Virus record (IMG/VR): IMGVR_UViG_3300024999_000030
Span: 248,001 to 312,000 of that record
Reading direction: 5' to 3' (one strand)
Length of the DNA: 64,000 nucleotides
A program made the translations under genes and the position numbers. Positions 8,366 through 44,378 of the stretch are shown in pieces. The notes under the pieces were generated by a model that worked only from the letters and a program-made list of their open reading frames with translations, did not search any database and was not told where the DNA came from. Every line of letters begins with the position of its first letter. Position 1 is the stretch's first letter.

Positions 8366-8647
8366 ATGAAAGCTAAAAGCAGATATTTTATTAATGATTT
8401 TACGCCTTGCGTCGGAAGAATTATTACATTTAATGTAGATGTGGCTCACTCTGGACAGGACGAGGAAACCCAGAGCCCCCTTCTTTTACTGCGAGAGGTA
8501 AAAGAAACTGGCGATGGACATTTTGTTTTGGTTGGTGTAAACTTAAAAAGGATTGAAGACCTAAAAACAATGGACCATAAAACCGCTCCATTCAGATCCT
8601 TTAGAGTAGATCGTATTGAGTTTGGGTCATTAAAAGTAGTAGTATAA
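8366..8647 (+). CDS. WYL-like / SH3-fold small protein
   Basis: C-terminal FRSFRVDRI matches the WYL-domain RxFRxDRI signature. Confidence 0.55.
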   Translation: MKAKSRYFINDFTPCVGRIITFNVDVAHSGQDEETQSPLLLLREVKETGDGHFVLVGVNLKRIEDLKTMDHKTAPFRSFRVDRIEFGSLKVVV

Positions 8648-10303: not shown

Positions 10304-11816
10304 AAAGCTTGGTATTTACGGATGTGAGGCAATTGAGGATTTAGTGTCGGCTGCACTTTTAACTGGTGACTCCGCTCTTTTTGTTGGAGCAGCTGGAAGC
10401 GGCAAAACTTTTATGTTAGAGAGAGTTGCCCAAACGCTCAATTTAAAATTCATTGCATACAATTGTTCCTCGGCTAATTTTGACGACATATGTGGATTTC
10501 CTATTTTAAACACAGAAAAAACTGAAATGAACTTTATCTCTACTCCGACTTCTATTTGGGGAGTCAACCTTGTGTTGTTGGATGAAATTAACAGAGCAAG
10601 GCTTGATATTCAAAATAACTATTTTCAGCTCATTAGAAACCGTAGTGTGCAGGGTAAGCGTGTAGATACATTGAAGTGGGTTTTTGCCGCCATGAACCCA
10701 TTGAGTTATGCTGGAACTCAGCCTTTAGATCAGGCTCTTGCAGATAGATTTGCATGGGTGATTAGAACTCCAGCATTTCATATTATTAATGAAGAAGACA
10801 GACATAATATCATCGGGAACATTACTGGTGATGATGCCCCTGCGATGAATCACTGGGGATTTTCTAAATCTTATCACCGCGATGAACAACTTACCGTGGG
10901 GCTTAAATCTTTCTTTGGTGCGGCGGCGGCTATATATAATGACTACCTTAATAACTGTAATGATGTTGTTAGTTATGTGGATGATTTTGTAATCTCAGTT
11001 AATAATTCTAGTGGATACTCTGGAGCAATTGAAGGTCGAAGAGCTGGTATTCTTCTTCGTAATATTCTATCTCTTGCTGCGGTGCGTGATGCTAGTGGTC
11101 TTCCTGGTGGCCTAGAGGCTGCTGCAGGTAAAGCAATTTTTCATTCATTTGTAAATGAAGCCATCGACCAGCCAATCCCAAATAAAATTTTAGAAACGGC
11201 TCATGAAAAAGCTAAAGTTTATTTGAGGAAATCGGCATCTTCTATTATGGAAACTATTGAACGATTGCCATTTTCCATTCAGAAAATTTCTAAGGGTATG
11301 GAACATAATATTGACCCCGTCGTTCTTGGTGGTTATGTGAACACCCATCTCACGGAAATTAATAAAGATGCGCCATTAACAGCGGCCTTTGCACTTGCTG
11401 TGTGGCCATATCTTAAAAATTCCAACGTGACTAACGATGCCTTGGCATCTGTGGCTGAGATTTTATCTGTTGCTCTGTCTAATCATAATTCTGATTTCTA
11501 TCGTTGCCCCGTTCTGTATGATATGCTTAATCCTAACTTACATTCTTTTACTGGTTTAAATGAAGTTATTAAATCTATTACTCCTGTTCCTGGACAAAAA
11601 TTTAATAACGTAACAGAGTTGTTAAAATCTGGTGACGCATTAGATAGCGTAGCTAAAAAGCTTGATCTTAATTTCCGTTATTATTATAATGATGCCCGGC
11701 TATTATCAGACTCTGCAAGGGCCATTAAAGCTTTGAAGGCTTATATGCGTATTTTATCTAATAATAATAAATTTACTCCGGCTAAGTTTGCCACTTCTCA
11801 ACAGAAGGGAGAATAA
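10293..11816 (+). CDS. MoxR-type AAA+ ATPase
   Basis: GAAGSGKT, LLDEINR, FAAMNP, LDQALADRF; ATG 10293 has SD AAAGGA. Confidence 0.9.
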   Translation: MELKKLGIYGCEAIEDLVSAALLTGDSALFVGAAGSGKTFMLERVAQTLNLKFIAYNCSSANFDDICGFPILNTEKTEMNFISTPTSIWGVNLVLLDEINRARLDIQNNYFQLIRNRSVQGKRVDTLKWVFAAMNPLSYAGTQPLDQALADRFAWVIRTPAFHIINEEDRHNIIGNITGDDAPAMNHWGFSKSYHRDEQLTVGLKSFFGAAAAIYNDYLNNCNDVVSYVDDFVISVNNSSGYSGAIEGRRAGILLRNILSLAAVRDASGLPGGLEAAAGKAIFHSFVNEAIDQPIPNKILETAHEKAKVYLRKSASSIMETIERLPFSIQKISKGMEHNIDPVVLGGYVNTHLTEINKDAPLTAAFALAVWPYLKNSNVTNDALASVAEILSVALSNHNSDFYRCPVLYDMLNPNLHSFTGLNEVIKSITPVPGQKFNNVTELLKSGDALDSVAKKLDLNFRYYYNDARLLSDSARAIKALKAYMRILSNNNKFTPAKFATSQQKGE

Positions 11817-14067: not shown

Positions 14068-14861
14068 TGAAAACTAAAGTTACTATTCCAATTTTAGGTG
14101 ACAATAAAGATACTGATTTTGATCCGGCCAATGACATGATGGTAATGGTTATTGCCACCACTTCAAAAGGGAATGACGAAAAATGGAAAGTAAGAGTTGG
14201 ACGCAAGATTCATAAGGGAATGGGAACCTTAGCTACATCTCGGGGGTGTTATGGGTCTGGGTACACTACTAATAGTAATGCTGGCATTGTAGAATCTTTT
14301 GATTATAGAAAAAATATTGGAACTGGTTGTGTTGTTATGATTAATGGTATTGCTCGTCATGTTCAACTTCCCCCAGAATATAATGCTCCTAAAGAATATG
14401 CTCTTGACTATGATGATAGTTGTGTAGATATCATTGCGGTGGAATCTGAAGATCAAATTACGGATTTTTCTAAGGGCAACCTCACATATATTGGTGGATG
14501 TATTATCAATATAAAAAATCAAAACTTTGCCAGTGGTTCAATAAACATTATTGAAGACGCTGGATTTATAAATGAAAATATATTCCAATTGGCTTTTTCT
14601 CCTTCTAATTCAGAAAAAGAATATAACGATCTTATTTGTTTAAATACTAATTTAACTTGCGTAGAGGGAGTTGAAGTTTGCTTAAAACCTTCTTTGTTAT
14701 TTATTTCTTATAAAGTTTCACATACAACTATTTCAAACGTTTTAACTTGTTATTTAGAAAAATATATTGACAAAAGTAAGAAGGAGTATTATATTGGGTG
14801 TAGTGGTATAAAAGAAAATAAACTAAACGCTAGTATTATGTTAAATGTAGGAGACAATTAA
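14067..14861 (+). CDS. hypothetical protein
   Basis: 264-aa ORF, TAATG-coupled. Confidence 0.75.
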   Translation: MKTKVTIPILGDNKDTDFDPANDMMVMVIATTSKGNDEKWKVRVGRKIHKGMGTLATSRGCYGSGYTTNSNAGIVESFDYRKNIGTGCVVMINGIARHVQLPPEYNAPKEYALDYDDSCVDIIAVESEDQITDFSKGNLTYIGGCIINIKNQNFASGSINIIEDAGFINENIFQLAFSPSNSEKEYNDLICLNTNLTCVEGVEVCLKPSLLFISYKVSHTTISNVLTCYLEKYIDKSKKEYYIGCSGIKENKLNASIMLNVGDN

Positions 14862-16045: not shown

Positions 16046-17230
16046 ATGATACAGTGGACAAAAGAAAGTAAGATTCCGATTAAAAGCTGGTGCCTCAATA
16101 TCGAAGGGGAAGCCCTTAAGCAGGCAATTGATTTATCTCTATTGTCCGTGGCTAAGCACCATGTTGCATTGATGCCAGATTGTCATAGTGGATTTGGTAT
16201 GCCTATTGGTGGGGTGGTGGCGTTGGAAGACGCCATCGCCCCTAATTTAGTGGGGGTGGATATTGGTTGTGGTATGGGAGCTATTAGAACTAATATTAAA
16301 GCTGGTTTAGTTTCAAAGGCCGATATCGAAGAGGTAATTGAAAGACTAGGTAAGTTAATTCCTGTTGGATTTAATTCTCATGACCATCGTATTGAGTGGA
16401 CAAGTTTTGATAATACCCCATATAAGACTTCGGTGAAAAATACATTTGTTTCAGAAGAAGAAATTAATAAAGCTAAGTATCAATTAGGAACTCTTGGAGG
16501 TGGTAATCACTTTTTAGAATTAGATAAAGATACTGATGGAAAAGTGTGGTTGCTTTTACATTCTGGTTCCCGTAATTTCGGATATGGTATTGCTAAGCGC
16601 TATCATGAAAAAGCAATTAAATATTGTGAAGATAATAAATTAGATTTACCAAATAAGGGGCTTGCATATTTTCATTTATCGTCCGACGAGGGTCAAGATT
16701 ATTTTAACGCAATGACTCTGGCTTTAGATTTTGCAAAAGAAAATCGACGTATTATGATGGAAGCCTTTAAAAAGGTAGTTAATAAAGTTTTTAAACATGT
16801 TGAATTTTTAGATGAATTTAATATTCACCATAATTATGCTGCTATTGAAAATCATTTTGGTTCTAATTTAATAGTTCATCGTAAGGGCGCCGTCGATGCT
16901 TCTATCGGAAGTAAGGGCTTGGTTCCGGGTTCGATGGGAACCTCTTCTTATATCGTTGAGGGACTTGGTAACGATGAGTCTTTTAGATCTTGCTCTCATG
17001 GAGCTGGAAGAAAGATGGCAAGAGGAGCGGCAAATAGAACTATTGATAAAGCGGAGGCAGATCGTCTGATGCATGGCATTGTTCATCAATGGGGAAAAGA
17101 TAGAAAAGGAAGTTTAGATTTATCTGAAGCCCCTCAGGCTTATAAAGACATTGATGTTGTAATGGAGGCTCAATCTGATTTAGCTAAACCAATTCATTCT
17201 TTAACACCTATGGGCGTTTTGAAAGGCTAA
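16046..17230 (+). CDS. rtcB: RtcB RNA ligase
   Basis: MPDCH, VGVDIGCG, LGTLGGGNHF, HSGSR, HHNY, HRKGA, PGSMG, SHGAGR, EAPQAYKDI all present. Confidence 0.96.
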   Translation: MIQWTKESKIPIKSWCLNIEGEALKQAIDLSLLSVAKHHVALMPDCHSGFGMPIGGVVALEDAIAPNLVGVDIGCGMGAIRTNIKAGLVSKADIEEVIERLGKLIPVGFNSHDHRIEWTSFDNTPYKTSVKNTFVSEEEINKAKYQLGTLGGGNHFLELDKDTDGKVWLLLHSGSRNFGYGIAKRYHEKAIKYCEDNKLDLPNKGLAYFHLSSDEGQDYFNAMTLALDFAKENRRIMMEAFKKVVNKVFKHVEFLDEFNIHHNYAAIENHFGSNLIVHRKGAVDASIGSKGLVPGSMGTSSYIVEGLGNDESFRSCSHGAGRKMARGAANRTIDKAEADRLMHGIVHQWGKDRKGSLDLSEAPQAYKDIDVVMEAQSDLAKPIHSLTPMGVLKG

Positions 17231-17386
17231 AATGACTAATGATATTTTTAATACTTATTTATCGGTTGAAGATTTCCAAAAAACACATGAACTAAGCATT
17301 AAGAGTACCTGGAAAATATATGAATTAAACATATCGGAAGATCCAAATCTATATACTTTTGGTGCTATGATGAAACGGATTATTAA

Positions 17387-29399: not shown

Positions 29400-29621
29400 A
29401 TGGCTAAAGTGTATGTAAGAGATGGTGAGCCGATTGATAGAGCGTTAAAGCGTTTTACTAATGCAGTATCTAAAGATGGGATTCTTCGTGAGCTTAAGAT
29501 GAGGGAATATTTTCTCACTGCAACTCAAAAGAAGAGAATTAAAAAAGAAGAAGCTAGAAAACGTTTCATGAAAAATCTTAAAAAGAAGTTTTCTAAGGAA
29601 GACTCACTAAGTAAACGCTAA
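29400..29621 (+). CDS. rpsU: ribosomal protein bS21
   Basis: VYVRDGEPIDRALKRF...GILRELKMREYF...KKRIKKEEARKR. Confidence 0.9.
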   Translation: MAKVYVRDGEPIDRALKRFTNAVSKDGILRELKMREYFLTATQKKRIKKEEARKRFMKNLKKKFSKEDSLSKR

Positions 29622-34359: not shown

Positions 34360-35171
34360 TTGATAAAATTAAGAAAGAAAGATTATCATACTCAAAGATA
34401 GATTGTTATAAACAATGTCCTTTTAAATATAAAAAGATACACATTGATAAGGATGTACCATTTAAAGAATCTATTGCCGTTAGATATGGACAATTTTTAC
34501 ATGGTATTCTTGAGGACTTAGGTAAGGCAATCAAGGACAATGATAATGAGTTTCCAGATAATGTAAATGATATAGTATCTAAGTCTTGGAAAAAATATAA
34601 GTCGGCACAGAAGATTTTTGATGGTGCATTAATTAAAGAGGCTGTAGATATCATACATAACGTTGGTAAAAAATTTAGAGCTACGCCTGATGAAAAAATA
34701 GTTGAAGTCGAAAAATCATTCAAAATGGATTTGGATGATAAATATTATATCCAGGGTAAAATTGATCAGGTTCTTAAAGTGGGAGATAGGTATTTAATTA
34801 GGGATTATAAAACAAATGCAGATACTAAATACTTATTAGCTGATCAATTACAACTTAAAATATATGCTATGGCATATAGTAGATTAAATAATATCCCGGC
34901 AGATAAGATTGATTGCAGTTATCTTATGTTAAGAATTGATTGCCAGGAACCTAAATCTAGTTTTGAACAAAAAGATATCGATGAAACAGAAATTTATTTA
35001 AAAACAATTATTAGGGAAATGGAAGTATCTAGATCCACAGGGACATATAAATGTGTAACTGGGGGTTTATGTCCATGGTGTCCTGTATTTGAAAACTGTC
35101 CTACAGCTAGTAAAAATCCTAGGTTCTTAACTAAGCGAGCTGAATTAAGGAGCCTTGGTAAGGTAGATTAA
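34356..35171 (+). CDS. RecB/Cas4-like PD-(D/E)xK exonuclease with Fe-S cysteines
   Basis: LSYS...CP, G-x2-LH, VE, GKID, IRDYKT, QL-x2-Y, CPWC-x5-C. Confidence 0.88.
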   Translation: MIDKIKKERLSYSKIDCYKQCPFKYKKIHIDKDVPFKESIAVRYGQFLHGILEDLGKAIKDNDNEFPDNVNDIVSKSWKKYKSAQKIFDGALIKEAVDIIHNVGKKFRATPDEKIVEVEKSFKMDLDDKYYIQGKIDQVLKVGDRYLIRDYKTNADTKYLLADQLQLKIYAMAYSRLNNIPADKIDCSYLMLRIDCQEPKSSFEQKDIDETEIYLKTIIREMEVSRSTGTYKCVTGGLCPWCPVFENCPTASKNPRFLTKRAELRSLGKVD

Positions 35172-38101
35172 TGAGACTCTACAAGTATTCCGATGATAAC
35201 AAAAATGTTAATGAAGAAACTAAAGATGGTCTAGAAGAATCAAAACCTCAATCTTCATCAACAATCCCAGAGATAGAGCCTGGGGAAAATGATGAAATGA
35301 TTGGGATACTTGTAGAGAGTTTTGCCGATACTCTTATATCTTCTTTATGGTCAGATGATTTTCCAATTCCACTATCGGAATTGACGCATCACATAGGACA
35401 ATTAGGAGAAAATAATTTTATAAGGTCCATGGAAAATATTAGGACCTTTTTAAGTAAAATTGGGGCTTTTAAATATGAGGTGCCAATCAACAACAAGGAA
35501 GATGCCCTCCAATATATACAATCGTTTTCCCCTCAGATTAAAGATTTAGGTAAGTCACATGCGATGGCACTGTTACAATTACTTGGTATTAGCGGAAGTA
35601 GACCAGAGGAAATCTCATTAGAAACCCCTATTGGTAGCCCATCAGCTAAAGGCGAAGAAGGTCGTCCAACTCTAGGTGGGACACTTACAGATAAAAATAC
35701 ACCTCTTAGTGAGTTATTAGATAAAGAAACCTATGTAGATAATTTATCTAGGATAAAAGATGTTTATGAAGAAATAGAAAATTTAGATCAGTTGTCACCA
35801 GAGGAAGCAGATACAAAACGCGGTCAATTACTTACACAATTAAAATCAATTGAAAAATCTTTTTCAGCTTTTGATGTGCCAGAACAAGTAGAAAAAAAAG
35901 TAGAACAGCTGTCTATTAAATTACAATCGTCAAACGCTTTTCAAAGTAGAGTAGAAGAACTTAAGGATAAATATGGTTTAGTGGATATGAAAGATCCTAA
36001 AATTTTAGCGTATGCTGCTCAGTTAGATAGGATGCCACCGATTAAACCAGGTGAGTTTAAAGAGGGGTTTCCAGTTGTTGACTTGTCTACTATTCCAGAT
36101 ATAGCTAAGACTGGCGCCAGCGACATAGCAAAGTTTTTATTGATAGCTAGATTATCAGAGTCTAAAGTCTTCTTAACGAGAAATCAAAATTCTGGTAGTC
36201 CGGTTGGTGGAGGAATGGCCACAAAGTGGCCCACTACTATATCTGGAACAGATACATTTATGGACCATAGATTTTCATCTAAGAAAGCATTCGTGAATTA
36301 TTCTGGAAATATTAGCTCATTAAGTTCAGAAGAGTTTAGTAAAATATTAGATAAATATTTAGGGGGGGCAGAGAAAGCCGGTTCGGGTAGACAAACTTCT
36401 TATACATGGCCCATGGTGTTTAGTCAGGCCTTAGGGTCCTTTATAGGTATGCCCGAAGAAGCTATGTTAAACCTTGGTGCAGAATTAGCAGACGCAATAG
36501 AGACTGAAGATAAATCTCAAATTAAAGCTGTGTTATCAAAATATAAATATAATTCATATGGAGTATTAACAGATACTTCTCATGACTCTTTATCTAAAAA
36601 TAATTATACTTTTAGTTCTATTTGTACTCCAACTCAAATGGTAAAGTCTTTAGCGGAAGCTAAGGGAACTAATGCTGAAACAATCCATGAAGAAATGAAA
36701 GGTCTTTTACCGAATAGTAAAACGCTTCAGGGGGCTATAGGACAACCAGTATTTGATAATAGAATGCCAATCATTCCAATGCCCCCAGAGGCACTAGTGG
36801 CCATTGCTTTCTATGTTGTGAGGTTATTTATAGCCACATGTAGAGCTAATGTAATATCAACAATAGAAGAATATAATTCTAATGAAAAAGTTCAATCAGA
36901 TATAGAATCTGTTATTAATAATTTAATGGATAATTTAAATTCATCTTTAGATTCATCTGGCGATTTTCGTTTATCTGGTGTGACTAAAGCATTTACGAGA
37001 CCTATTATACAAACCACTAAGCTTCAAAATTTTGGGGTATCGGTGGATAAACTTAAATCATTAGCAATGGAAGGTATTAAATTATCATTGCAAAGTGGAG
37101 CATTATTATCTTCATCGGAAGCCTCATTCGATTTTAAAAAACAGTCGTCATTTAATAGAGAGGCAATTTATAATATTGCCACTACTTTATCTAAAGCCAC
37201 ATTAGATAGTATCCAAGTTGGGGATAAAACCATCCCGACCAATATGACTAGTGTAACTTCTGGAACTCGTCTTACGGATTTTAGTTCCAGAAGATTATTA
37301 GATGTAGAAAAAGCCGAACAGCATGGTAGATATTCATTATCTCAGCCCGAGCAAATTAAAGCAAGCACATCTGAAACTGTTCGTAGATCTATGGGTAGAA
37401 TGTCAAGTCTTGTTGATAATTGTAATCTAGTATCTATCATTGGAGTGGAACAAAGCGAAGATGCCACTGTATTTGCCATTCGGTCTAACTCTAGTCCCGT
37501 AATACAAAATGGCGGTAAGGGAGCAAAGATTACTATCTATACAAATACGGATGGAAAAAGAGAAGAGGTATTATCTTCCACAACTGATAGAATTTCAGTT
37601 AAACCATCAATTGGGGACGATAGTGGTAGGCTGGCATACAAGTTGTTTATATCACCAGCAGTTGATTTTTCTATGGAAGACTTTGATTATGAGCTTAGTA
37701 TAGGTCAAGAAATTATGTATCAAGCTAGATTAGCCACTGAGAAAAACACTCTTGATGTTTGGATTAGAGAAGTTAACAAAGAATTATTTAAGTTTAATGA
37801 AATGAAGTCTGAAATGATTCAAGCTATTTCTTCTAATAATTTATCAAGGGCTATGGAAGTTATGAGAATTAATGAGCTATCTTTAAGGGTGGACCTAAAT
37901 AGATTTAAAACACTTAATTCAGATTACAAATCTATTGTAGATTCTGTAATGAATAAAATTAAAGATAAAGAAGACGTAGATGCATATTCTATTTTTATAA
38001 AAGATTATGTATTTAAATGTATAGTGGCTATTAATCAAATCAGAACTCAAATTGTTGATTTTAAAAAACAAGCAGCTATTATTCTTGGGGTGGGTAAATG
38101 A
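35171..38101 (+). CDS. large hypothetical protein (976 aa) with a sigma-finger-like segment
   Basis: Long ORF; contains ISLETPIG...TLGGTLTD. Confidence 0.8.
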   Translation: MRLYKYSDDNKNVNEETKDGLEESKPQSSSTIPEIEPGENDEMIGILVESFADTLISSLWSDDFPIPLSELTHHIGQLGENNFIRSMENIRTFLSKIGAFKYEVPINNKEDALQYIQSFSPQIKDLGKSHAMALLQLLGISGSRPEEISLETPIGSPSAKGEEGRPTLGGTLTDKNTPLSELLDKETYVDNLSRIKDVYEEIENLDQLSPEEADTKRGQLLTQLKSIEKSFSAFDVPEQVEKKVEQLSIKLQSSNAFQSRVEELKDKYGLVDMKDPKILAYAAQLDRMPPIKPGEFKEGFPVVDLSTIPDIAKTGASDIAKFLLIARLSESKVFLTRNQNSGSPVGGGMATKWPTTISGTDTFMDHRFSSKKAFVNYSGNISSLSSEEFSKILDKYLGGAEKAGSGRQTSYTWPMVFSQALGSFIGMPEEAMLNLGAELADAIETEDKSQIKAVLSKYKYNSYGVLTDTSHDSLSKNNYTFSSICTPTQMVKSLAEAKGTNAETIHEEMKGLLPNSKTLQGAIGQPVFDNRMPIIPMPPEALVAIAFYVVRLFIATCRANVISTIEEYNSNEKVQSDIESVINNLMDNLNSSLDSSGDFRLSGVTKAFTRPIIQTTKLQNFGVSVDKLKSLAMEGIKLSLQSGALLSSSEASFDFKKQSSFNREAIYNIATTLSKATLDSIQVGDKTIPTNMTSVTSGTRLTDFSSRRLLDVEKAEQHGRYSLSQPEQIKASTSETVRRSMGRMSSLVDNCNLVSIIGVEQSEDATVFAIRSNSSPVIQNGGKGAKITIYTNTDGKREEVLSSTTDRISVKPSIGDDSGRLAYKLFISPAVDFSMEDFDYELSIGQEIMYQARLATEKNTLDVWIREVNKELFKFNEMKSEMIQAISSNNLSRAMEVMRINELSLRVDLNRFKTLNSDYKSIVDSVMNKIKDKEDVDAYSIFIKDYVFKCIVAINQIRTQIVDFKKQAAIILGVGK

Positions 38102-38790
38102 AAGAGTTTGCATATGTAGTTTCCAGACTCAAAACAGCCGCTCAACAAACCGGTGAAACTTGCTATATAGTTGGTGGAGCCGTGAGAGATATAATATCTC
38201 TTAAGAAGATTAAGGATGTTGATACGGTGGTGGCAATAAATCCTGAAAAATTTGCCTCAGCATTAGCCTCTACAACGGAGGGAGCAACCGCAGAAGAGGT
38301 TCATGCTCCATTTCCATTGTGGTCAGTGGATATTAGCGACGTGTCTGTAGATGTAGTTGGGTTAAGAGGAAAGAGTCTTCAAGAAGATATTCAACATAGA
38401 AATTTTACTATCAATACAATATACTATGACGTAGTAAGAGATAGGTTTGAAGATCCAACTGGAAAAGGGTTTACTGATCTTTATAATGGAGTAATTAATA
38501 CTGTTACTCCAGATTCTTTTGTTTTTTTTAGTTCTAGTCCACATGAAATTAATAGCATATTTATAGCAATAAGATTAGTAGCGGATTCCGGATTTAAATT
38601 AAGTGAACAATTAAAAAGCGGAATTAGGAAAGCCTTAGAGCATGGCCTCATTCCCGCTGAGTTATCTAAGAGATCTAAAAAGGAAATACTAAGAACTAGG
38701 CTTTCACATAATTTTAAGACCAAAGCTCTCCCCATAATTGAAGAGCTTGGTTTGGAGCATTTTTATGAAGCTGCCGCTGTTTCTCCATAA
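38098..38790 (+). CDS. divergent tRNA nucleotidyltransferase/poly(A) polymerase-family protein
   Basis: YIVGGAVRD, KDVD, EDIQHRNFTIN, DPTGKG-x2-DL. The flexible loop is deleted and the EDxxR motif is absent. Confidence 0.85.
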   Translation: MKEFAYVVSRLKTAAQQTGETCYIVGGAVRDIISLKKIKDVDTVVAINPEKFASALASTTEGATAEEVHAPFPLWSVDISDVSVDVVGLRGKSLQEDIQHRNFTINTIYYDVVRDRFEDPTGKGFTDLYNGVINTVTPDSFVFFSSSPHEINSIFIAIRLVADSGFKLSEQLKSGIRKALEHGLIPAELSKRSKKEILRTRLSHNFKTKALPIIEELGLEHFYEAAAVSP

Positions 38791-41700
38791 AACCGCCCAG
38801 GCGGGATTAAATCAAGCTGTATTTAATATGGTAGCAGCCGCCACTGATGCAGGATTTAATGCACCAATCTATTTAGCTGGTGGTGCCGCTAGAGATATCA
38901 TTCTTGGAAAGTCTCCTAATGACCTAGATGTTATGATAGAAAAAGAAAATGGAGCTGAAGAATTTGGAAAAATTTATTTAAACTATTGTGAAAAAAATAA
39001 CATTAAAGTTTCTACTCCAGGTAAAGCTGTGGGTGCTAATTTTGGTGTATATAAATTTAGGCACGATGGTTTAGAATTAGATTTTGCTACTTCGCGTACC
39101 GATACTTATACTGAAGATTCTAGGAAGCCTACAGTTGAATCTGCAAGCCTTAATGAAGATGCGGAGAGAAGAGACTTCAGTATTAATGCTATGTATGTTT
39201 GTATATACGGCACTCCCTCTGTTCAACCAGATGACAAGGTTGATATTGGAGGAAGAGAGTTTGGAGTTTATGACCCAACTCATAAAGGAATTAAAGATTT
39301 AAAAAATGGAGTTATTAGTTTTGTAAATGATGATCATGATTTTACTTTAAGCGAGGACCCCATTAGGGCTCTTAGGGCAGTAAAATTTTCTGGTAGAAAG
39401 TTTGGAGAAAAAACTTTTACAATTGAACCAGAGACATCTAAAAGTATTAAAGATTTTTTAAATTCAGAAAAAGGTAAAGAGCTATATCTTAAAAAGGTTA
39501 AACCGGAGAGGCCCTGGAAAGAATTAAAAGATATTCTAACTGCTCAGAATTTAAAAGAAGCTATGAAACAGTTTAAGGAAACTGGAGTCAGGGACTTTAT
39601 TTTTGATTTACCAAAAGAAGAATTTAATAGTTGGGACATGGATCAACTTAACAAACATCATAATCTTAATTTATATGATCACACAATCTTTGCTATGGAA
39701 AATCTTGGAGAAGGACTTCATACTATGGGGGAAAATGGCCTTCCCATTTCCAAAGACACTGAAGCCACTATACAACTAGCAATGTTATTACATGATGTGG
39801 GAAAAAGACATAAAGAATTTAAACCTAGAGAAGATGGAACAGTTAAATATTTAAAGCATGAAAATAAATCTACAGATGTTTTAAAAAAATATGTTTGGCC
39901 GAAGCTGGCACAGTTACCACCAAAAACTCAAGAGATTGTTAATTACTTTGTGAAGAGTCATATGGATTTTCATAAGTATCCCAAGAAGGATGAGGGAGAT
40001 ATTAGATTTTTAAAGCAGATGATTTATAATCTATTGCCTAAAACTTTTGGTGGTTCTCTTGGAGCAGATAAAGAAAAACAGATGGAGATAATGTCTTATG
40101 TTGTGAGTTTCTTTGGTAGCGCAGATTCTTCTGCAAAACAATTAGAGGATGAAGAAAAAAATAAACTAACAAAAGACTACGAAGACTTTGGTAATAGACT
40201 TAGATTGTCTAAACCAAGGAACCTTTTGTTTAATGTTGCTGCTCCAATCATCAAAGAAATATTGACTAATCATGGAGTTCAAATTTATAATAGTGCAATC
40301 GGATCTATATATGAATACTTAAATGTTTATATTATTAACGTTTCAGAAGAACCAAAAGATATAATTCAATTTGTATCTAAGCAGACAGAACAAATTCTAA
40401 CCAATGTAAAAAATTTTGTTAAAGAATTTATAAATGAGCATGAAGGAACAAATGAACAAGAGGCGCTTGATAAATATCTTGCCAATGCTCATAAGTTTTC
40501 TGGATCAATTAAACATAGGTTTAAAAAAGATGCAATCTTTGAAGTGTTGTCGGATTTATATAAAGATAAAAAAATAAATGGAGATGTAAAAATGCCTAAG
40601 CTCGTTATTGCTAAATATAAATCTAAAAAGAAACTCGATACCGGTACAGTTGTATATGAGTATGGAGAAGCCGATAAAAAGAAACGAGCTAAAAAAAAGG
40701 CACGTCAAGTGAGAAAGGTGTTTCAAAATATTAATAAAATTAAAAAATCTTTTGAAAAAGATCTAAAGTCCGATGATAAAAAAATACAAATGACGGCTTT
40801 AGCTGTGGGAATTATTTATCATATTTATGAGCGGGTAGGCGATAGAGCTAATGTAGGAACAGGCGTTACTTCATTTAGAAAGAAACATATTACAGTAAAA
40901 GGAAATAAAGTACAGTTTAAATATGTGGGAAAATCACATATGAAACAAGATAAAACATTAACAGATTCAACTATAGCCAAAATCATTAAGGAGAATTTAG
41001 AAGGTAAAAGTAGTAATGCATATCTGTTTGACTATACAGATGAAAATGGTAAAAAATTTGATGTATATTCCAGTGACATTAATGAATATCTTAAATCTTT
41101 TAACATTACCGCTAAAGATTTAAGGGCCCACGCAGCTAATGATATTTTAATTGCTAAACTTAAATCAGCTGGAAAAGCTAAAGGTGAATCTCCAGAAGAA
41201 AAAGAAAAATGGCGTAAAGAAAAACTCAAAGAATTAATTGAAGAAACAGCTGATGAAATTGGTCATACTCCCGGCATTTGCAAATCATCATATATAGACC
41301 CATCTCTTATGGATGAATATATAGCCAGTGGTAAAATTATTAAATTAGCTGCTGATTTTGATTTGACAGTAATAATTAAACTTGCGGATATTTCTGTTAA
41401 TCCAAAGATTAAAGAGTTAATGGATAGAGAATTCACACCAGAAGAACAATCAATCATTTCAAATCCACATGATGTAAGATCTACAATTAATGATGAAGTG
41501 TTCTTACAGGCCTTAAGTAAAGCTAAACAACAAGGAACTTTATCTGGTTTATTAGAAATAGTAGAAGATAATGACCCTTCTGCTTTTGGAGTTACCCCGG
41601 TTATAGTTGGTGGTAAAGCTATTCCCATTATTGGGCTCAATGTTAATAAAATTAAAGAAGAGGCAGCCCAGAAAGGTAAATCGATTGAAGAGGTGTTGTC

Positions 41701-42295
41701 AGAACAGGTTAAACAATTTTTAGGAGTCATGGCCCATGAGAAAGAACATGTCGAAGGCAAAGGTGAACCTGAAGCTGAAAGAGTACAAAAAGATGAAGTG
41801 TCTAAACAAACTTCTCAAGAAGGGTCATCATCTAAGCTAACAATGGGCTCTCTTAAGTTGGCATCTACAGATAAATCTCTTTTTCAAAAACTTGGTATTA
41901 GAGATATTAGTAATGATACCTTATTAAAAGTATCCAATAATGTTTTAAAAATTCTTGGAATCCCAAATACCAATCTTAATATAGGACTATTGTCTCTTGG
42001 GTATCTTGTTATGCTTGGTAATCACCCCTATAGGTCAGAATGGAATATTAGACAAGCTACGGGTTTATCTGAACCAATTAATATTAAGGAAGCACAGACC
42101 CTATATAATATTTTAGATAACGCAATAGATGAGAAACCTATTGAAGAAGATAAGGCAAAAGAATATTATTCTTTTTCCGATGAAGATAAAATGAATCTAG
42201 GTGAACTACAATCACTTAAGTGGGAATCTGAACCATCCTATGCGGCTGGAACAGGTATGGGATTTTATCCTCAAACACATCCTTTTAATTACTAA
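38765..42295 (+). CDS. multidomain protein: CCA-adding enzyme (NTase + HD) / topoisomerase IB / HExxH domain / unknown C-terminus
   Basis: GGAARD, DLD, RTDTY-x3-SRKP, RRDFSINA, EDPIRALR, LLHDVGK; then ERVG, FKYVGKS, AKDLR, GHTPGICKSSYID; then HEKEH. Confidence 0.9.
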   Translation: MKLPLFLHKTAQAGLNQAVFNMVAAATDAGFNAPIYLAGGAARDIILGKSPNDLDVMIEKENGAEEFGKIYLNYCEKNNIKVSTPGKAVGANFGVYKFRHDGLELDFATSRTDTYTEDSRKPTVESASLNEDAERRDFSINAMYVCIYGTPSVQPDDKVDIGGREFGVYDPTHKGIKDLKNGVISFVNDDHDFTLSEDPIRALRAVKFSGRKFGEKTFTIEPETSKSIKDFLNSEKGKELYLKKVKPERPWKELKDILTAQNLKEAMKQFKETGVRDFIFDLPKEEFNSWDMDQLNKHHNLNLYDHTIFAMENLGEGLHTMGENGLPISKDTEATIQLAMLLHDVGKRHKEFKPREDGTVKYLKHENKSTDVLKKYVWPKLAQLPPKTQEIVNYFVKSHMDFHKYPKKDEGDIRFLKQMIYNLLPKTFGGSLGADKEKQMEIMSYVVSFFGSADSSAKQLEDEEKNKLTKDYEDFGNRLRLSKPRNLLFNVAAPIIKEILTNHGVQIYNSAIGSIYEYLNVYIINVSEEPKDIIQFVSKQTEQILTNVKNFVKEFINEHEGTNEQEALDKYLANAHKFSGSIKHRFKKDAIFEVLSDLYKDKKINGDVKMPKLVIAKYKSKKKLDTGTVVYEYGEADKKKRAKKKARQVRKVFQNINKIKKSFEKDLKSDDKKIQMTALAVGIIYHIYERVGDRANVGTGVTSFRKKHITVKGNKVQFKYVGKSHMKQDKTLTDSTIAKIIKENLEGKSSNAYLFDYTDENGKKFDVYSSDINEYLKSFNITAKDLRAHAANDILIAKLKSAGKAKGESPEEKEKWRKEKLKELIEETADEIGHTPGICKSSYIDPSLMDEYIASGKIIKLAADFDLTVIIKLADISVNPKIKELMDREFTPEEQSIISNPHDVRSTINDEVFLQALSKAKQQGTLSGLLEIVEDNDPSAFGVTPVIVGGKAIPIIGLNVNKIKEEAAQKGKSIEEVLSEQVKQFLGVMAHEKEHVEGKGEPEAERVQKDEVSKQTSQEGSSSKLTMGSLKLASTDKSLFQKLGIRDISNDTLLKVSNNVLKILGIPNTNLNIGLLSLGYLVMLGNHPYRSEWNIRQATGLSEPINIKEAQTLYNILDNAIDEKPIEEDKAKEYYSFSDEDKMNLGELQSLKWESEPSYAAGTGMGFYPQTHPFNY

Positions 42296-43094: not shown

Positions 43095-44378
43095 ATGAAT
43101 GTAATGCACCACGCTATGGCTCAGCCCCATAAGGTAATTGTAGTAATGGACGACAAGGAAGTTAAGACAGCCATCCATGATTTTTGGGCAGTTAATGGGG
43201 CCACTCTAATGAAAGACACCCCTGGCTCATGGACCAAAGCTACTGCCTTGAGGGAATATTTGGAAAAACAAAAGGGCAGTAAATTATATTGGGACATGAT
43301 GTGGGAGTGGATTAGTGATGGTATTAAGAAAGTACCATTGAAGGTTTATAGAATTTCATCTGTTAGTGTGGACAAATGGGACGAAAAGACTGGAGCAATT
43401 CTTTCTGTTGTTGTCGACATAATTCCCAAAGTAAAACTTGGAGACTATAAAAATATTAAGTTACAGATGCCATCATTTAAAGCCCAACCCAAAGAGGTTG
43501 AAGGACAAATCCTGTTAGCGCTTAATCATTCACCGTTAGCTACTACCGAACAACTTCATAAGGTAATTGAAGCTGGAGACACAGTAGAGATGTCTTACTC
43601 TTTAACTAGAGTGGACAACAATGAAGTGCTTCAAACTAATGTTCGTGATATGGTCCATCTTAGTTCAGGCGCATATGCACCACAATTTGTTTCCGCTATT
43701 ATTGGGGAGTCTGCTCCAGATAAATTCAATAAAACTATTATTTTTCCTGAAGACTATATTCACGAATCTTTACGTGGAGTAGAGGTTAATCTTCAAGTAG
43801 AGACCACTGGAGTAATAAAACGTACACTACCCACTGAGGAAGCTGAAGCAGTTAGAGAGGGGATGTCGCTGGAAGATTGGCGAGCTAGGTTTGTTATGGA
43901 GATTGAAAAAAATAAAAAAGAGACATTTGAAATTAAAAAAAGAGATTTTATTAGAGCAGAAGCAGAAAAAATTCTGTTAGCTACTTCTGAAATAGATCCA
44001 ATTCCAGATAGTATGGTAGAGTCAGAAGCGGAGGCCCTTATGCAAAATCTAGCTAAATCTAAAAATATGACAGTAGATGAATATGCAGCAGAGATGAAGG
44101 TGAGTAAAGAATCTTTGTTTGCGGAGCTAGCATATCTAGCTGTAAGGCGACTTATGGTTAGGTTTGTTGTGGATGCTATCTGTGAAATGGAAGATTTTAA
44201 AGCAGATGAAAATAAGACTGAAGAATTTTTAATTAAATATGCAGCCGAAGCTGGCGAATCAGTAGAAAAAATAAAGACAGATGTTGGAGAAAAAGATATT
44301 TCTTTCTTAGTTAAATCTTATATGGTAGATGAATTTATTAATCAACATGTGGTTCTAGTGGAACCATCAGTTAGTTGA
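43095..44378 (+). CDS. tig: trigger factor-like chaperone
   Basis: 427 aa; PKVKLGDYKNIK, GDTV, FPEDY-x4-LRG, IPDSMVESE and a helical C-domain, colinear with trigger factor. Confidence 0.8.
   Translation: MNVMHHAMAQPHKVIVVMDDKEVKTAIHDFWAVNGATLMKDTPGSWTKATALREYLEKQKGSKLYWDMMWEWISDGIKKVPLKVYRISSVSVDKWDEKTGAILSVVVDIIPKVKLGDYKNIKLQMPSFKAQPKEVEGQILLALNHSPLATTEQLHKVIEAGDTVEMSYSLTRVDNNEVLQTNVRDMVHLSSGAYAPQFVSAIIGESAPDKFNKTIIFPEDYIHESLRGVEVNLQVETTGVIKRTLPTEEAEAVREGMSLEDWRARFVMEIEKNKKETFEIKKRDFIRAEAEKILLATSEIDPIPDSMVESEAEALMQNLAKSKNMTVDEYAAEMKVSKESLFAELAYLAVRRLMVRFVVDAICEMEDFKADENKTEEFLIKYAAEAGESVEKIKTDVGEKDISFLVKSYMVDEFINQHVVLVEPSVS

What the first reader, a model, noticed from the sequence alone, without database searches (positions are those of the whole stretch)
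38098..38790. Second, remodelled nucleotidyltransferase: loop-deleted like CC-adding enzymes but lacking the nucleotide-template motif
Seen: catalytic GGAVRD/DxD are retained, but the flexible loop is missing (VDVVGLR-GKSLQED versus RTDTYTEDSRKPTVESASLNED in the neighbour), RRD has become HRN, and the EDxxR template motif is replaced by SSSPHEINS. Established: loop deletion characterises CC-adding enzymes that partner A-adding enzymes (e.g. Aquifex, Deinococcus), RRD contributes to ribose discrimination and EDxxR specifies C/A. Inference: one half of a split CC/A pair, an NTase with new specificity (non-templated tailing, dNTP use), or an inactive decoy.
Basis: partly seen in the sequence, partly recalled or inferred. 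Interest (0 to 1): 0.68.

Follow-up and report, generated by a model that had tools for sequence, protein, structure and literature searches.

The report
Topoisomerase-partnered stripped-down nucleotidyltransferase in huge phage
A groundwater huge phage carries a small, strongly conserved enzyme that is only the catalytic half of a tRNA CCA-adding enzyme with a rebuilt nucleotide pocket, and its true partner appears to be a type IB topoisomerase, not the CCA-adding enzyme next door.

Summary
ORF 38098-38790 (+) encodes 230 aa with a class II nucleotidyltransferase head (Pfam E 1e-17). It keeps GGAVRD/DxD and the third carboxylate. It lacks the flexible loop, has HRN for RRD, and lacks the EDxxR template. 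It also has no body or tail: a pLDDT 95.6 model matches only the head and neck of tRNA nucleotidyltransferases.

The gene is not decaying. dN is 0.06-0.14 against saturated synonymous sites, and 16 of 18 near-invariant core positions are kept.

The "split CC/A pair" reading is not supported. Relatives at 81% identity keep this gene where the neighbouring CCA module is missing. All 29 phage tRNAs encode CCA. CC-adding enzymes keep motif D and the tRNA-binding domains.

Its nearest non-trivial relatives (36-42% identity) are N-terminal domains of a phage type IB topoisomerase at the same syntenic position. Together with the short forms they make one clade (support 99) that shares xRN and the lost template.

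At least three other nucleotidyltransferase–TopIB fusions or adjacencies exist, representing two further class II lineages. They come with cyclic-phosphodiesterase, phosphatase and pyrophosphatase modules.

Best reading: a split-off, probably active 3'-end nucleotidyltransferase subunit of a TopIB-centred end-processing enzyme. Its substrate and nucleotide are unknown. It is a new variant of a known kind.

The parts
38098..38790 (+). Short class II nucleotidyltransferase gene (230 aa): head and neck domains only
   Evidence: ORF. Pfam PF01743 at E 1e-17. AF2 pLDDT 95.6. Foldseek TMq about 0.8 and TMt about 0.5 to class II tRNA NTases. dN 0.06-0.14 with pS above 0.75.
38173..38223 (+). Motif A, GGAVRD...DVD (residues 26-42): metal-binding carboxylates D40 and D42, kept
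   Evidence: Invariant in clade alignments A1 and A3 and near-invariant in the 105-sequence alignment A2.
38347..38376 (+). Third carboxylate D85 (VDVV), followed by the loop-deletion junction LRGKS. The flexible loop and the acidic residue of BxA are absent.
   Evidence: D85 aligns to Glu74 of the Aquifex A-adding enzyme. 14 residues are missing relative to 1vfg and 26 relative to E. coli PAP. Loop length is 14 against 28 in the neighbour.
38395..38403 (+). Motif B is HRN instead of RRD. The D-to-N change is shared by the whole clade and by no other sequence of the 237 compared.
   Evidence: Position 102 is D in at least 90% of 105 class II sequences.
38452..38481 (+). Motif C, DPTGKGFTDL, kept
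   Evidence: D119, G124, D127 and L128 are invariant or near-invariant.
38530..38577 (+). Remodelled motif D helix, SSSPHEINSIFIAIRL. The templating Asp and Arg and the next Arg (R156 to I) are replaced. The clade signature is [DN][NS]IFIAxRL.
38668..38691 (+). Motif E region, KRSKKEIL (R192, E196), kept
   Evidence: Near-invariant positions in A2.
38765..42295 (+). Neighbour gene: canonical CCA-type NTase (head, loop, RRD, EDPIR, RNA-binding domain) + HD motif region + type IB topoisomerase core (about aa 621-870 of the 1185-aa frame) + C-terminal extension with conserved HExxH. The start is ambiguous: 38765 (GGAG 7 nt upstream; the frame is conserved with L006) or 38828 (the call in the source record).
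   Evidence: Pfam PF01743, PF12627 and PF01028. HD is weak at E 0.005. TopIB R, K, R, H and Y are invariant in 34 homologs. Nearest solved structures are Deinococcus and poxvirus TopIB. Start codons.
40592..41347 (+). TopIB core within the neighbour gene. This is the module to which the short NTase is fused in its relatives.
35171..38101 (+). Upstream 976-aa protein of unknown function. Its stop overlaps the NTase start (ATGA). It holds the same position in every related locus.
   Evidence: No Pfam, PHROG or Atlas lead. Only 53% identical between the window and L003, against 81% for the NTase.

Best explanation
The ORF is a functional gene for a minimal class II (CCA-enzyme-type) nucleotidyltransferase. 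It is the catalytic head plus neck only, and it is the split-off N-terminal module of a phage NTase-topoisomerase IB enzyme.

Shown:
- It keeps the three metal-binding carboxylates and 16 of the 18 near-invariant core positions.
- The two changed near-invariant positions (D102 to N in motif B, R156 to I in the motif D helix), together with the two replaced base-templating residues (Asp and Arg of EDxxR), lie in motifs the literature ties to ribose and base recognition.
- The flexible loop and the tRNA-anchoring body and tail are absent.
- The same remodelled module is fused to a catalytically intact TopIB in the orthologous position of related phages.

Inferred:
- The protein still transfers nucleotides to a 3'-OH.
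- It no longer reads C/A with the protein template.
- It no longer holds tRNA by itself.
- It works on nucleic-acid ends presented by, or generated alongside, the TopIB protein encoded immediately downstream. It would be part of an end-processing and repair module.
- In this phage lineage the fused gene underwent fission. A conventional CCA-HD tRNA-repair module now sits on the TopIB gene's N-terminus.

The substrate (DNA nick or end, or RNA/tRNA end) and the nucleotide used are not known.
For: The gene is real and constrained.
- Pfam E 1e-17.
- dN 0.06-0.14 with synonymous sites saturated.
- 81% identity between the window and L003, higher than the TopIB part (72%) and the upstream ORF (53%).

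Fold.
- The pLDDT 95.6 model matches class II tRNA NTases at TMq 0.77-0.82.
- It covers only about half of each target.

The remodelling is focused.
- The near-invariant positions of 105 class II sequences are all kept except D102 and R156.
- The clade-wide signatures are xRN and [DN][NS]IFIAxRL.

The partner is TopIB.
- The best non-trivial hits among 1.84 billion representatives are NTase::TopIB fusions: P0005 at E 4e-39 and P0006 at E 6e-33.
- Four more fusions were found, P0154-P0157.
- The 10 short and fused sequences form one clade with support 99.
- Every contig long enough to show it carries the same synteny: SbcD-SbcC-x-PDDEXK-large ORF-NTase/TopIB-x-UDG-trigger-like-PHP-DnaE-HU.
- In L003 the NTase, two TAG codons, and the TopIB ATG lie in one frame. 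The linker length is similar to that of the fusions.

TopIB is intact.
- The catalytic R, K, R, H and Y are invariant.

The link recurs in other lineages.
- At least three further class II NTase-TopIB fusions or adjacencies were found, representing two further lineages: the window's own CCA-HD::TopIB; and P0184 (fusion) with L090 (adjacency), whose NTases are related to each other. L032 is a further NTase-TopIB adjacency whose NTase was not placed.
- These come with 2H, HAD_SAK_1, PAP2, HD and pyrophosphatase modules.
Against: - No biochemical or expression data exist. No RNA run holds the region.
- The complex prediction between the short NTase and the TopIB part gave no verdict, score 0.00. 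This is not evidence either way.
- Fusion could reflect the 'polyvalent protein' habit of phages, which string unrelated enzymes on one chain with an HExxH peptidase (PMC5512222). In that case adjacency would not imply a shared substrate.
- The motif D replacement is not conserved between the short (HEINS) and fused (KRGDN-type) subclades. This could mean relaxed constraint on the pocket rather than a new specificity.
- TopIB cleavage leaves 3'-phosphotyrosyl and 5'-OH ends, not the 3'-OH that an NTase needs. The coupling chemistry is therefore unexplained.
- Only 2 of 80 generic viral class II NTase loci have a TopIB within 6 kb. The link is lineage-specific.
Confidence: 0.55

Rival explanations
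1. Stand-alone minimal RNA/tRNA 3'-end tailing or repair enzyme. It is active but functionally independent of the TopIB. The fusions and adjacency would only reflect phage 'polyvalent' gene packing of several counter-defence or repair enzymes.
For: - The catalytic core is intact.
- The phage invests in tRNA repair: RtcB in the window at 16046-17230, a CCA-HD module next door, and 29 tRNAs.
- TopIB relatives carry RNA-repair-type domains: 2H, HAD_SAK_1.
- The TopIB C-terminal extension has a conserved HExxH like the peptidase of polyvalent proteins (PMC5512222).
- There is a weak Atlas lead to an LPD domain, score 0.77.
Against: - No body or tail to hold tRNA.
- The class II NTase-TopIB association recurs in at least three NTase lineages.
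- The locus sits in a DNA replication and recombination block, not among virion or early-injection genes.
Confidence: 0.2
2. Non-catalytic module: a nucleotide-binding regulatory domain, or a structural or nucleic-acid-binding domain of the TopIB enzyme, that has lost polymerase function.
For: - The base template is lost and the ribose-recognition motif is altered.
- The motif D replacement differs between subclades.
- The TopIB core has only a short N-terminal hairpin in place of the usual N-terminal clamp domain. Alignments start at residue 66-88 of solved TopIBs. An added domain could substitute for it.
Against: - All three carboxylates, GGxVRD, and motifs C and E are invariant across 36-40% identity.
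- There is strong purifying selection.
- Some TopIB homologs start directly with the core and have no N-terminal module.
Confidence: 0.12
3. One reading: the CC-adding half of a split CC/A pair that works with the neighbouring full-length enzyme on tRNA.
For: - The loop deletion and loss of BxA resemble bacterial CC-adding enzymes (PMC7014341).
- The gene is adjacent to, and overlaps, a full-length CCA-type gene.
- Many loop-deleted full-length relatives also have xRD instead of RRD.
Against: - CC-adding enzymes keep all five motifs and the body and tail (PMC7014341, PMC3925840). Here motif D and body/tail are missing.
- L003-L005 keep the short gene where the CCA module is absent from the locus.
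- The fused relatives have TopIB, not a CCA enzyme, as partner.
- All 29 tRNA genes encode CCA.
- The neighbour has the loop, RRD and EDPIR of a complete CCA enzyme.
Confidence: 0.05
4. A decaying duplicate (pseudogene) of a CCA-adding enzyme.
For: Truncated length and loss of two canonical motifs.
Against: - Intact ORFs of 228-230 aa in four independent assemblies.
- dN 0.06-0.14 with synonymous sites saturated.
- The 'lost' motifs are replaced by conserved clade-specific residues.
- The model is confident and well packed.
Confidence: 0.01

Closest known systems
Bacterial CC-adding enzymes (class II tRNA nucleotidyltransferases of Aquifex aeolicus, Bacillus halodurans, Deinococcus; solved as 3wfo-3wfs)
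   Same: Class II head and neck fold. The flexible loop is deleted and the BxA element is missing. Many loop-deleted relatives likewise have xRD for RRD.
   Different: CC-adding enzymes keep motif D (the xDxxR template), the Asp of RRD, and the body and tail domains that bind tRNA. They are 400-500 aa long and pair with an A-adding enzyme. This protein has none of these, and its partner is a TopIB.
[quoted passage not shown]
   Same: These are the best structural matches: TMq 0.77-0.82, 21-28% identity. Motifs A, C and E and the catalytic carboxylates are shared.
   Different: The query covers only about half of each target (TMt about 0.5). It has no loop, no EDxxR, no RRD, and no body or tail. 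It falls far below every NCBIfam equivalog cut-off, for example 48.7 bits against 290. The divergent neighbour also falls below those cut-offs.
Bacterial poly(A) polymerase I (PcnB, 3aqk-3aqn)
   Same: Highest-scoring sequence match in the PDB for the clade profile, E 3e-20. Same head and neck.
   Different: PAP has a long insert where the query has the deletion (26 residues more). PAP keeps EDPVR and RRD and carries C-terminal RNA-binding domains. In the tree, PAP-type sequences form a distant long-loop group.
Poxvirus/bacterial type IB topoisomerases (Deinococcus radiodurans 2f4q, variola 2h7f, vaccinia 1a41) and the 'phage-specific topoisomerase I' noted in some jumbo phages (PMC7824862)
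   Same: The partner protein has the TopIB catalytic core with invariant R, K, R, H and Y.
   Different: I found no description of a TopIB joined to a class II nucleotidyltransferase. The phage core lacks most of the usual N-terminal domain and carries a roughly 315-aa extension with HExxH.
Multidomain phage 'polyvalent proteins' and 'Swiss Army Knife' RNA-repair proteins (PMC5512222; Pfam HAD_SAK_1)
   Same: Relatives of the partner TopIB combine 2H phosphoesterase, HAD_SAK_1, PAP2, Ham1, pyrophosphatase and NTase modules on long chains. An HExxH motif is conserved in this clade.
   Different: No zincin peptidase or LPD domain was confirmed here. There is only a motif and a 0.77 Atlas lead. 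The locus lies in a replication and recombination block. I could not read Burroughs & Aravind 2016 (not held), so I could not check whether it lists TopIB in such systems.

Membership tests
Class II (PolyA_pol head, Pol-beta superfamily) nucleotidyltransferases | Head domain with GGxxRD and DxD (motif A) plus a third carboxylate | tested here: met
   Pfam PF01743 at 65 bits against a cut-off of 23. G26, G27, R30, D31, D40, D42 and D85 are kept. D85 aligns to Glu74 of 1vfg.
Class II (PolyA_pol head, Pol-beta superfamily) nucleotidyltransferases | Head and neck three-dimensional fold | tested here: met
   AF2 pLDDT 95.6. Foldseek E 2e-14 and TMq about 0.8 to 4wbz, 3h37 and 1miv.
tRNA CCA-adding enzyme (class II) | Motif D, EDxxR, the amino-acid template for CTP and ATP | tested here: not met
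   Replaced by HEINS in a gap-free alignment (SSPHE in HMMER's). The following Arg (R156) is Ile.
tRNA CCA-adding enzyme (class II) | Motif B, RRD (ribose recognition) | tested here: not met
   HRN. The Asp is present in at least 90% of 105 relatives and is Asn in all 10 clade members.
tRNA CCA-adding enzyme (class II) | Flexible loop and BxA element needed for A addition | tested here: not met
   14 residues fewer than 1vfg and 26 fewer than PAP. R-G-K stands in place of basic-x-acidic.
tRNA CCA-adding enzyme (class II) | [quoted passage not shown] | tested here: not met
   The protein ends after the neck at 230 aa. Structural matches cover only the N-terminal half of the targets. No PF12627 or PF13735 hit.
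tRNA CCA-adding enzyme (class II) | Score above curated equivalog thresholds | tested here: not met
   NCBIfam best scores are 56.3 against 305.65 (PcnB) and 48.7 against 290 (CCA). The neighbour's canonical module also falls below these cut-offs, so this test has low discriminating power for phage proteins.
Bacterial CC-adding enzyme (half of a split CC/A pair) | Deletion of the flexible loop | tested here: met
Bacterial CC-adding enzyme (half of a split CC/A pair) | All five core motifs A-E retained, plus tRNA-binding C-terminal domains | tested here: not met
   Motif D is lost, motif B is altered, and there is no body or tail. The requirement comes from PMC7014341.
Bacterial CC-adding enzyme (half of a split CC/A pair) | Co-occurrence with an A-adding partner wherever it occurs | tested here: inconclusive
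   The CCA-type module is absent from the locus in L003-L005 and from the fused relatives' loci. Those contigs are partial genomes. The window's genome has only the two PF01743 genes.
Bacterial CC-adding enzyme (half of a split CC/A pair) | CC addition to tRNA lacking CCA | not testable with these tools
   Needs an enzyme assay.
Bacterial poly(A) polymerase I | PAP-specific C-terminal domain (PF12626) and the long insert between motif A and motif B | tested here: not met
   No PF12626 hit. The query has a deletion where PAP has 26 extra residues. PAP-type sequences form a separate group in the tree.
TopIB-linked 'xRN' nucleotidyltransferase clade (defined here) | Monophyly; xRN in motif B; [DN][NS]IFIAxRL in place of EDxxRxLRAxRF; loop of 13-14 residues | tested here: met
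   The 10 sequences form one clade with SH-aLRT 99. The signatures are shared by all 10 and by none of the other 227 sequences compared.
TopIB-linked 'xRN' nucleotidyltransferase clade (defined here) | Fused to, or immediately upstream of, a TopIB gene | tested here: met
   Fused in P0005, P0006 and P0154-P0157. Adjacent in L003-L005. Adjacent with a CCA-HD module intervening in the window, L006 and L007.
TopIB-linked 'xRN' nucleotidyltransferase clade (defined here) | Physical interaction of the split NTase with the TopIB protein | tested here: inconclusive
   Complex prediction gave no verdict, score 0.00.

The most novel reading that the evidence does not exclude
The phage type IB topoisomerase is the hub of an undescribed nucleic-acid end-repair machine. 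Interchangeable modules are attached to or encoded beside it: class II nucleotidyltransferases, 2',3'-cyclic phosphodiesterase (2H, HD), HAD and PAP2 phosphatases, and pyrophosphatase. Within this machine the remodelled, template-less NTase would extend 3' ends at breaks held by the topoisomerase, using nucleotides other than the C/A pair, possibly deoxynucleotides or any base. One example would be the repair of 2',3'-cyclic-phosphate nicks that TopIB makes at ribonucleotides in DNA. Another would be broken tRNA or RNA ends, with the TopIB acting on RNA.
Probability: 0.2. Interest if true: 0.85.

Novelty: new variant of a known kind. Interest (0 to 1): 0.62.

Why it matters
Class II nucleotidyltransferases are a textbook case of template-free but sequence-specific polymerisation. 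Specificity is ascribed to the EDxxR template, the flexible loop, and the tRNA-measuring body and tail. This conserved natural clade keeps the chemistry but has discarded all three. In their place it has a type IB topoisomerase as covalent or encoded partner.

This gives a direct experimental handle on two questions. The first is what a bare head-neck core can do, and what decides its nucleotide choice once the template is gone. The second is why huge phages repeatedly join TopIB to 3'-end-healing and 3'-end-extending enzymes. No characterised TopIB is known to work with such partners, so the result could reveal a new repair pathway or a TopIB activity on RNA.

For annotation, these genes should not be called 'CCA-adding enzyme' or 'poly(A) polymerase'.

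Tried and rejected
- Single-sequence AF2 model: pLDDT 46, unusable. It was replaced by an alignment-based model.
- Complex prediction of the short NTase (alignment A2) with the TopIB-plus-extension part (alignment A4): score 0.00, no verdict. Not evidence either way.
- Megablast of the region against deposited phages: no match.
- tblastn of the NTase against deposited phages: only distant (under 30%) full-length CCA enzymes of Lak and Aeromonas phages.
- tblastn of the TopIB core against deposited phages: one uncultured 485-kb phage and weak Xanthomonas/Erwinia phage hits.
- IMG/VR scan with the clade alignment: only the same phage again (L007) plus generic CCA enzymes.
- Upstream 976-aa protein: no Pfam, PHROG or Atlas lead.
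- C-terminal extension of the TopIB protein: no Pfam hit. The Atlas scores (0.80 or lower, including an LPD23 cluster at 0.77) are only leads.
- Idea that TAG is recoded, prompted by a tRNA with anticodon CTA and the two in-frame TAGs in L003. TAG ends about 10% of long ORFs in the genome. The DnaE split in L004 is a TAA. L003 has its own ribosome-binding site and ATG for the TopIB. So there is no evidence of general recoding, and occasional read-through remains untested.
- Idea that the TopIB must be the RNA-sealing enzyme because a ligase is lacking: rejected for this phage, since an RtcB gene is present.
- Literature searches for a TopIB-nucleotidyltransferase link: nothing relevant.
- Burroughs & Aravind 2016 could not be read.
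- Read laying was not used. No RNA run holds the region, and independent assemblies already agree on the gene structure.
- No alternative genetic code was applied.

Full report
**Setting.** The window is bases 248001-312000 of a 332,730-bp virus record that CheckV rates complete. The same sequence occurs in groundwater metagenomes from three studies, and no RNA run holds it. The genome is AT-rich (about 35% G+C), and almost all genes lie on the + strand. It carries 29 tRNA genes, all with an encoded CCA end.

The finding lies in a replication and recombination block. Its order is: S21-like, DnaG zinc ribbon, SbcD, SbcC, a 202-aa ORF, a PD-(D/E)XK nuclease, a 976-aa ORF of unknown function, the short nucleotidyltransferase, a 1185-aa multidomain protein, small ORFs, a trigger-factor-like protein, PHP, DnaE-type polymerase and HU.

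**Observation check.** ORF 38098-38790 (+) encodes 230 aa. Its ATG overlaps the stop of the upstream gene (ATGA). Pfam places a PolyA_pol head domain at residues 22-133 (E 9.7e-18), and PHROGs calls it tRNA nucleotidyltransferase.

- GGAVRD...DVD (residues 26-42) is kept.
- A third carboxylate, D85, aligns to Glu74 of the Aquifex A-adding enzyme.
- The segment between that residue and motif B is 14 residues, against 28 in the neighbour. That is 14 fewer than in 1vfg and 26 fewer than in E. coli poly(A) polymerase.
- Motif B reads HRN.
- The motif D helix reads SSSPHEINSIFIAIRL where canonical enzymes have EDxxRxLRAxRF.

Loop deletion is the hallmark of bacterial CC-adding enzymes, EDxxR is the amino-acid template, and RRD is linked to ribose recognition (PMC7014341, PMC2910056). 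[quoted passage not shown]

First, the protein is only head plus neck. A model built on a 105-sequence alignment has mean pLDDT 95.6. It superposes on class II tRNA nucleotidyltransferases at TMq 0.77-0.82 but covers only about half of each target. No RNA-binding or C-terminal domain is detected.

Second, the remodelling is focused. In the 105-sequence alignment, 18 positions are invariant or at least 90% conserved. The query keeps 16 of them, including motifs A, C and E. It differs only at D102 (now N) and R156 (now I), and it has also lost the templating Asp and Arg.

Third, the neighbour is not a simple CCA enzyme. It is a canonical CCA-type module (loop, RRD, EDPIR, RNA-binding domain, H...HD motifs) fused to a type IB topoisomerase core. 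The core has invariant R, K, R, H and Y, and its nearest solved relatives are Deinococcus and poxvirus TopIB. A roughly 315-aa extension with a conserved HExxH follows.

**Real gene, not decay.** The word-based search found only four close relatives of 228-230 aa at 81-100% identity. Between the window, L006 and L003, non-synonymous divergence is 0.06-0.14, while synonymous differences are saturated (pS 0.76-0.94). At 81% identity between the window and L003, the protein is more conserved than the TopIB part (72%) or the upstream ORF (53%). HRN and the remodelled helix are conserved in all of them.

**Why it is not the CC half of a split pair.**
- CC-adding enzymes share all five core motifs with CCA-adding enzymes and keep the tRNA-binding C-terminal half (PMC7014341, PMC3925840). 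This protein lacks motif D, the Asp of motif B, and body and tail.
- In L003-L005 (81% identity) the short gene is followed directly by a 564-aa TopIB gene. The CCA-HD module (residues 1-614 of the window's long protein) is absent from that locus.
- The short and long nucleotidyltransferases are only about 26% identical and fall in different parts of the tree.
- The phage's tRNA genes all encode CCA, so only repair, not synthesis, is needed.
- The genome has just these two PF01743 genes.

**The relatives point to a topoisomerase partner.** The word search left only near-identical relatives, and the question rested on what more distant kin look like. I therefore ran the exhaustive search. After the protein itself, the best hits are P0005 (533 aa, E 4e-39) and P0006 (816 aa, E 6e-33). 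In both, the whole 230-aa module is the N-terminal domain of a protein whose next domain is the TopIB core. A further search found four more such fusions, P0154-P0157, of 807-823 aa.

The fused and free forms share the following:
- the 13-14-residue loop region;
- xRN in motif B, found in none of the other 227 class II sequences compared;
- [DN][NS]IFIAxRL in place of the template helix.

Together they form one clade with SH-aLRT 99, on a long stem whose position among other class II enzymes is unresolved.

Every contig long enough to show it carries the same gene order, from SbcCD and the PD-(D/E)XK nuclease through to UDG, the trigger-factor-like gene and DnaE. The fused and split genes are therefore orthologous slots.

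In L003 the elements run in this order, all in one reading frame: the NTase stop (TAG), 12 codons, a second TAG, 4 codons, then the TopIB ATG. The linker length is close to that of the fusions, and a GGGAGA ribosome-binding site precedes the ATG. This looks like fission of a fused ancestor, although on the tree a single fusion event is equally parsimonious.

In the window and L006, a conventional CCA-HD module occupies the junction and is fused to the TopIB instead.

**A wider pattern.** Homologs of this TopIB core sit in long multidomain proteins. Their other domains include PAP2 phosphatase, 2H/LigT phosphoesterase, HAD_SAK_1 (the HAD family of 'Swiss Army Knife' RNA-repair proteins), Ham1 and DUF5661. 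One (P0184) carries a different class II nucleotidyltransferase.

Two further loci repeat the pairing.
- L090 encodes, in a row, a 662-aa class II NTase related to P0184's NTase domain, a DUF5661-2H protein, and a Ham1-HAD_SAK_1-TopIB protein.
- L032 encodes an NTase-HAD_SAK_1-2H protein directly upstream of a TopIB-pyrophosphatase protein.

So at least three class II NTase lineages are linked to this TopIB family: the xRN clade, the window's CCA-HD module, and the P0184/L090 lineage. L032 adds one more NTase-TopIB adjacency, though I did not place its NTase in the tree. The accompanying modules are enzymes that heal 2',3'-cyclic-phosphate or 3'-phosphate ends, or that remove pyrophosphate.

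The association is specific rather than general. Of 80 viral loci with a class II NTase, only two have a TopIB within 6 kb: L032 and the same phage again.

**Most likely mechanism.**

Shown:
- a catalytic head-neck core with intact metal ligands;
- a rebuilt nucleotide-selection pocket;
- no tRNA anchor;
- an evolutionary, and in relatives covalent, tie to an intact TopIB.

Inferred:
- The protein is an active 3'-end nucleotidyltransferase that no longer selects C/A through the protein template.
- It depends on the TopIB protein to bring the nucleic acid.
- It functions in end processing or repair.

I put this at 0.55. I cannot say whether the substrate is DNA or RNA. DNA is favoured by the replication and recombination context and by all known TopIB biology. 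RNA or tRNA is favoured by the CCA-HD, 2H and HAD_SAK_1 company. How a 3'-OH-requiring enzyme couples to TopIB chemistry (3'-phosphotyrosyl plus 5'-OH) is unexplained. This phage has an RtcB ligase (window 16046-17230), so the TopIB is not needed as an RNA sealer here.

**Rivals.**
- An independent minimal RNA-tailing enzyme whose fusion to TopIB is mere 'polyvalent' packing (0.20). The conserved HExxH and PMC5512222 make this serious.
- A non-catalytic nucleotide-binding or structural module (0.12).
- The split CC/A pair (0.05).
- A pseudogene (0.01).

The motif D replacement differs between the short (HEINS) and fused (KRGDN-type) subclades. This cuts both ways: it could mean diverging specificity or relaxed constraint.

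**Comparison with known families and novelty.** By fold and motif A it belongs to the class II nucleotidyltransferase superfamily. It fails the defining features of CCA-, CC- and A-adding enzymes and of PcnB: template motif, RRD, body and tail, and the curated NCBIfam thresholds. The threshold test is weak, because the neighbour's canonical module also scores below the cut-offs.

I found no description of a TopIB joined to a class II nucleotidyltransferase. A survey of jumbo phages mentions a phage-specific topoisomerase I and, separately, CCA-adding enzymes, without linking them (PMC7824862). One key review of RNA-repair systems could not be read, so prior mention cannot be fully excluded. 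I class the finding as a new variant of a known kind.

**Limits.**
- All relatives come from metagenomic contigs, most of them partial.
- There are no expression or biochemical data.
- The complex prediction gave no verdict.
- The tree used a quick search without a mixture model, on 98 of 237 sequences sampled by loop length. Only the monophyly of the 10-member clade is claimed.
- No alternative genetic code, read mapping or sequence repair was used.

Noticed in passing
window 38765 (or 38828)-42295 (+): The neighbour is a four-part fusion: a canonical CCA-type nucleotidyltransferase, an HD-motif region, a type IB topoisomerase core with an intact catalytic pentad, and a roughly 315-aa extension with conserved HExxH. 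The same fusion is present in L006 at 81% identity. The start codon is ambiguous. 38765 has GGAG 7 nt upstream and overlaps the short gene by 26 nt. The source record calls 38828.
   Followed up: partly
L003:10685-10741 (also L004, L005): In the 81%-identical relative, the NTase stop (TAG), 12 codons, a second TAG, 4 codons and the TopIB ATG all lie in one reading frame. This looks like a recently split fusion gene. The window's genome encodes a tRNA with anticodon CTA, so amber read-through producing some fused protein is conceivable but untested.
   Followed up: partly
genome outside the window: G000:C1 11061-33549 and 179810-180473: There are 29 tRNA genes, all with an encoded CCA end. One has anticodon CTA (14708-14783; ARAGORN calls it Pyl/suppressor). 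Several are unusually long (94 nt for a Met and an Ile-TAT), which could mean introns. TAG still ends about 10% of long ORFs.
   Followed up: partly
window 16046-17230 (+): A full-length RtcB RNA ligase gene (Pfam RtcB, E 4e-107). The phage therefore carries a conventional tRNA/RNA sealing enzyme as well as the CCA-HD module. No Rnl-type ligase, 2H or HAD_SAK_1 hit was found in the genome.
   Followed up: partly
L032:5659-12716 and L090:5067-14284: Two unrelated huge-phage contigs repeat the pairing. L032 has an NTase-HAD_SAK_1-2H protein directly upstream of a TopIB-inorganic pyrophosphatase protein. L090 has a 662-aa class II NTase, a DUF5661-2H protein and a Ham1-HAD_SAK_1-TopIB protein in a row. 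Other TopIB homologs carry PAP2 and 2H domains (P0168, P0176).
   Followed up: partly
window 35171-38101 (+): A 976-aa ORF with no detectable family, translationally coupled to the short NTase (ATGA). It is present at the same position in every related locus (796-1208 aa) but evolves quickly: 53% identity where the NTase has 81%.
   Followed up: partly
window 29400-29621 (+) and 43095-44378 (+): Translation-related genes in a phage: a 73-aa ribosomal protein S21-like ORF (its counterpart in L003 has a Pfam Ribosomal_S21 hit on record), and a 427-aa protein with trigger factor N- and C-terminal domains.
   Followed up: partly
P0007 (7,704-aa predicted protein from the representative library): The third-best relative of the short NTase is a 7,704-aa predicted protein with a Cpn10 domain and four separate PolyA_pol head domains. 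It is probably several genes read through under the wrong genetic code, and it comes from a phage with multiple class II nucleotidyltransferases.
   Followed up: no
L004, about 17327-17338: The DnaE-type polymerase gene is split by a TAA codon in L004. In the otherwise near-identical L003 the same position is a Glu codon. This is either a strain-level nonsense variant or an assembly or sequencing error.
   Followed up: no
L006 around 8586-8625 and 11335-11396: Runs of N (scaffold gaps) in this JGI contig split the upstream large ORF and the CCA-HD::TopIB gene into two called genes each. The splits are artefacts, not real gene boundaries.
   Followed up: yes
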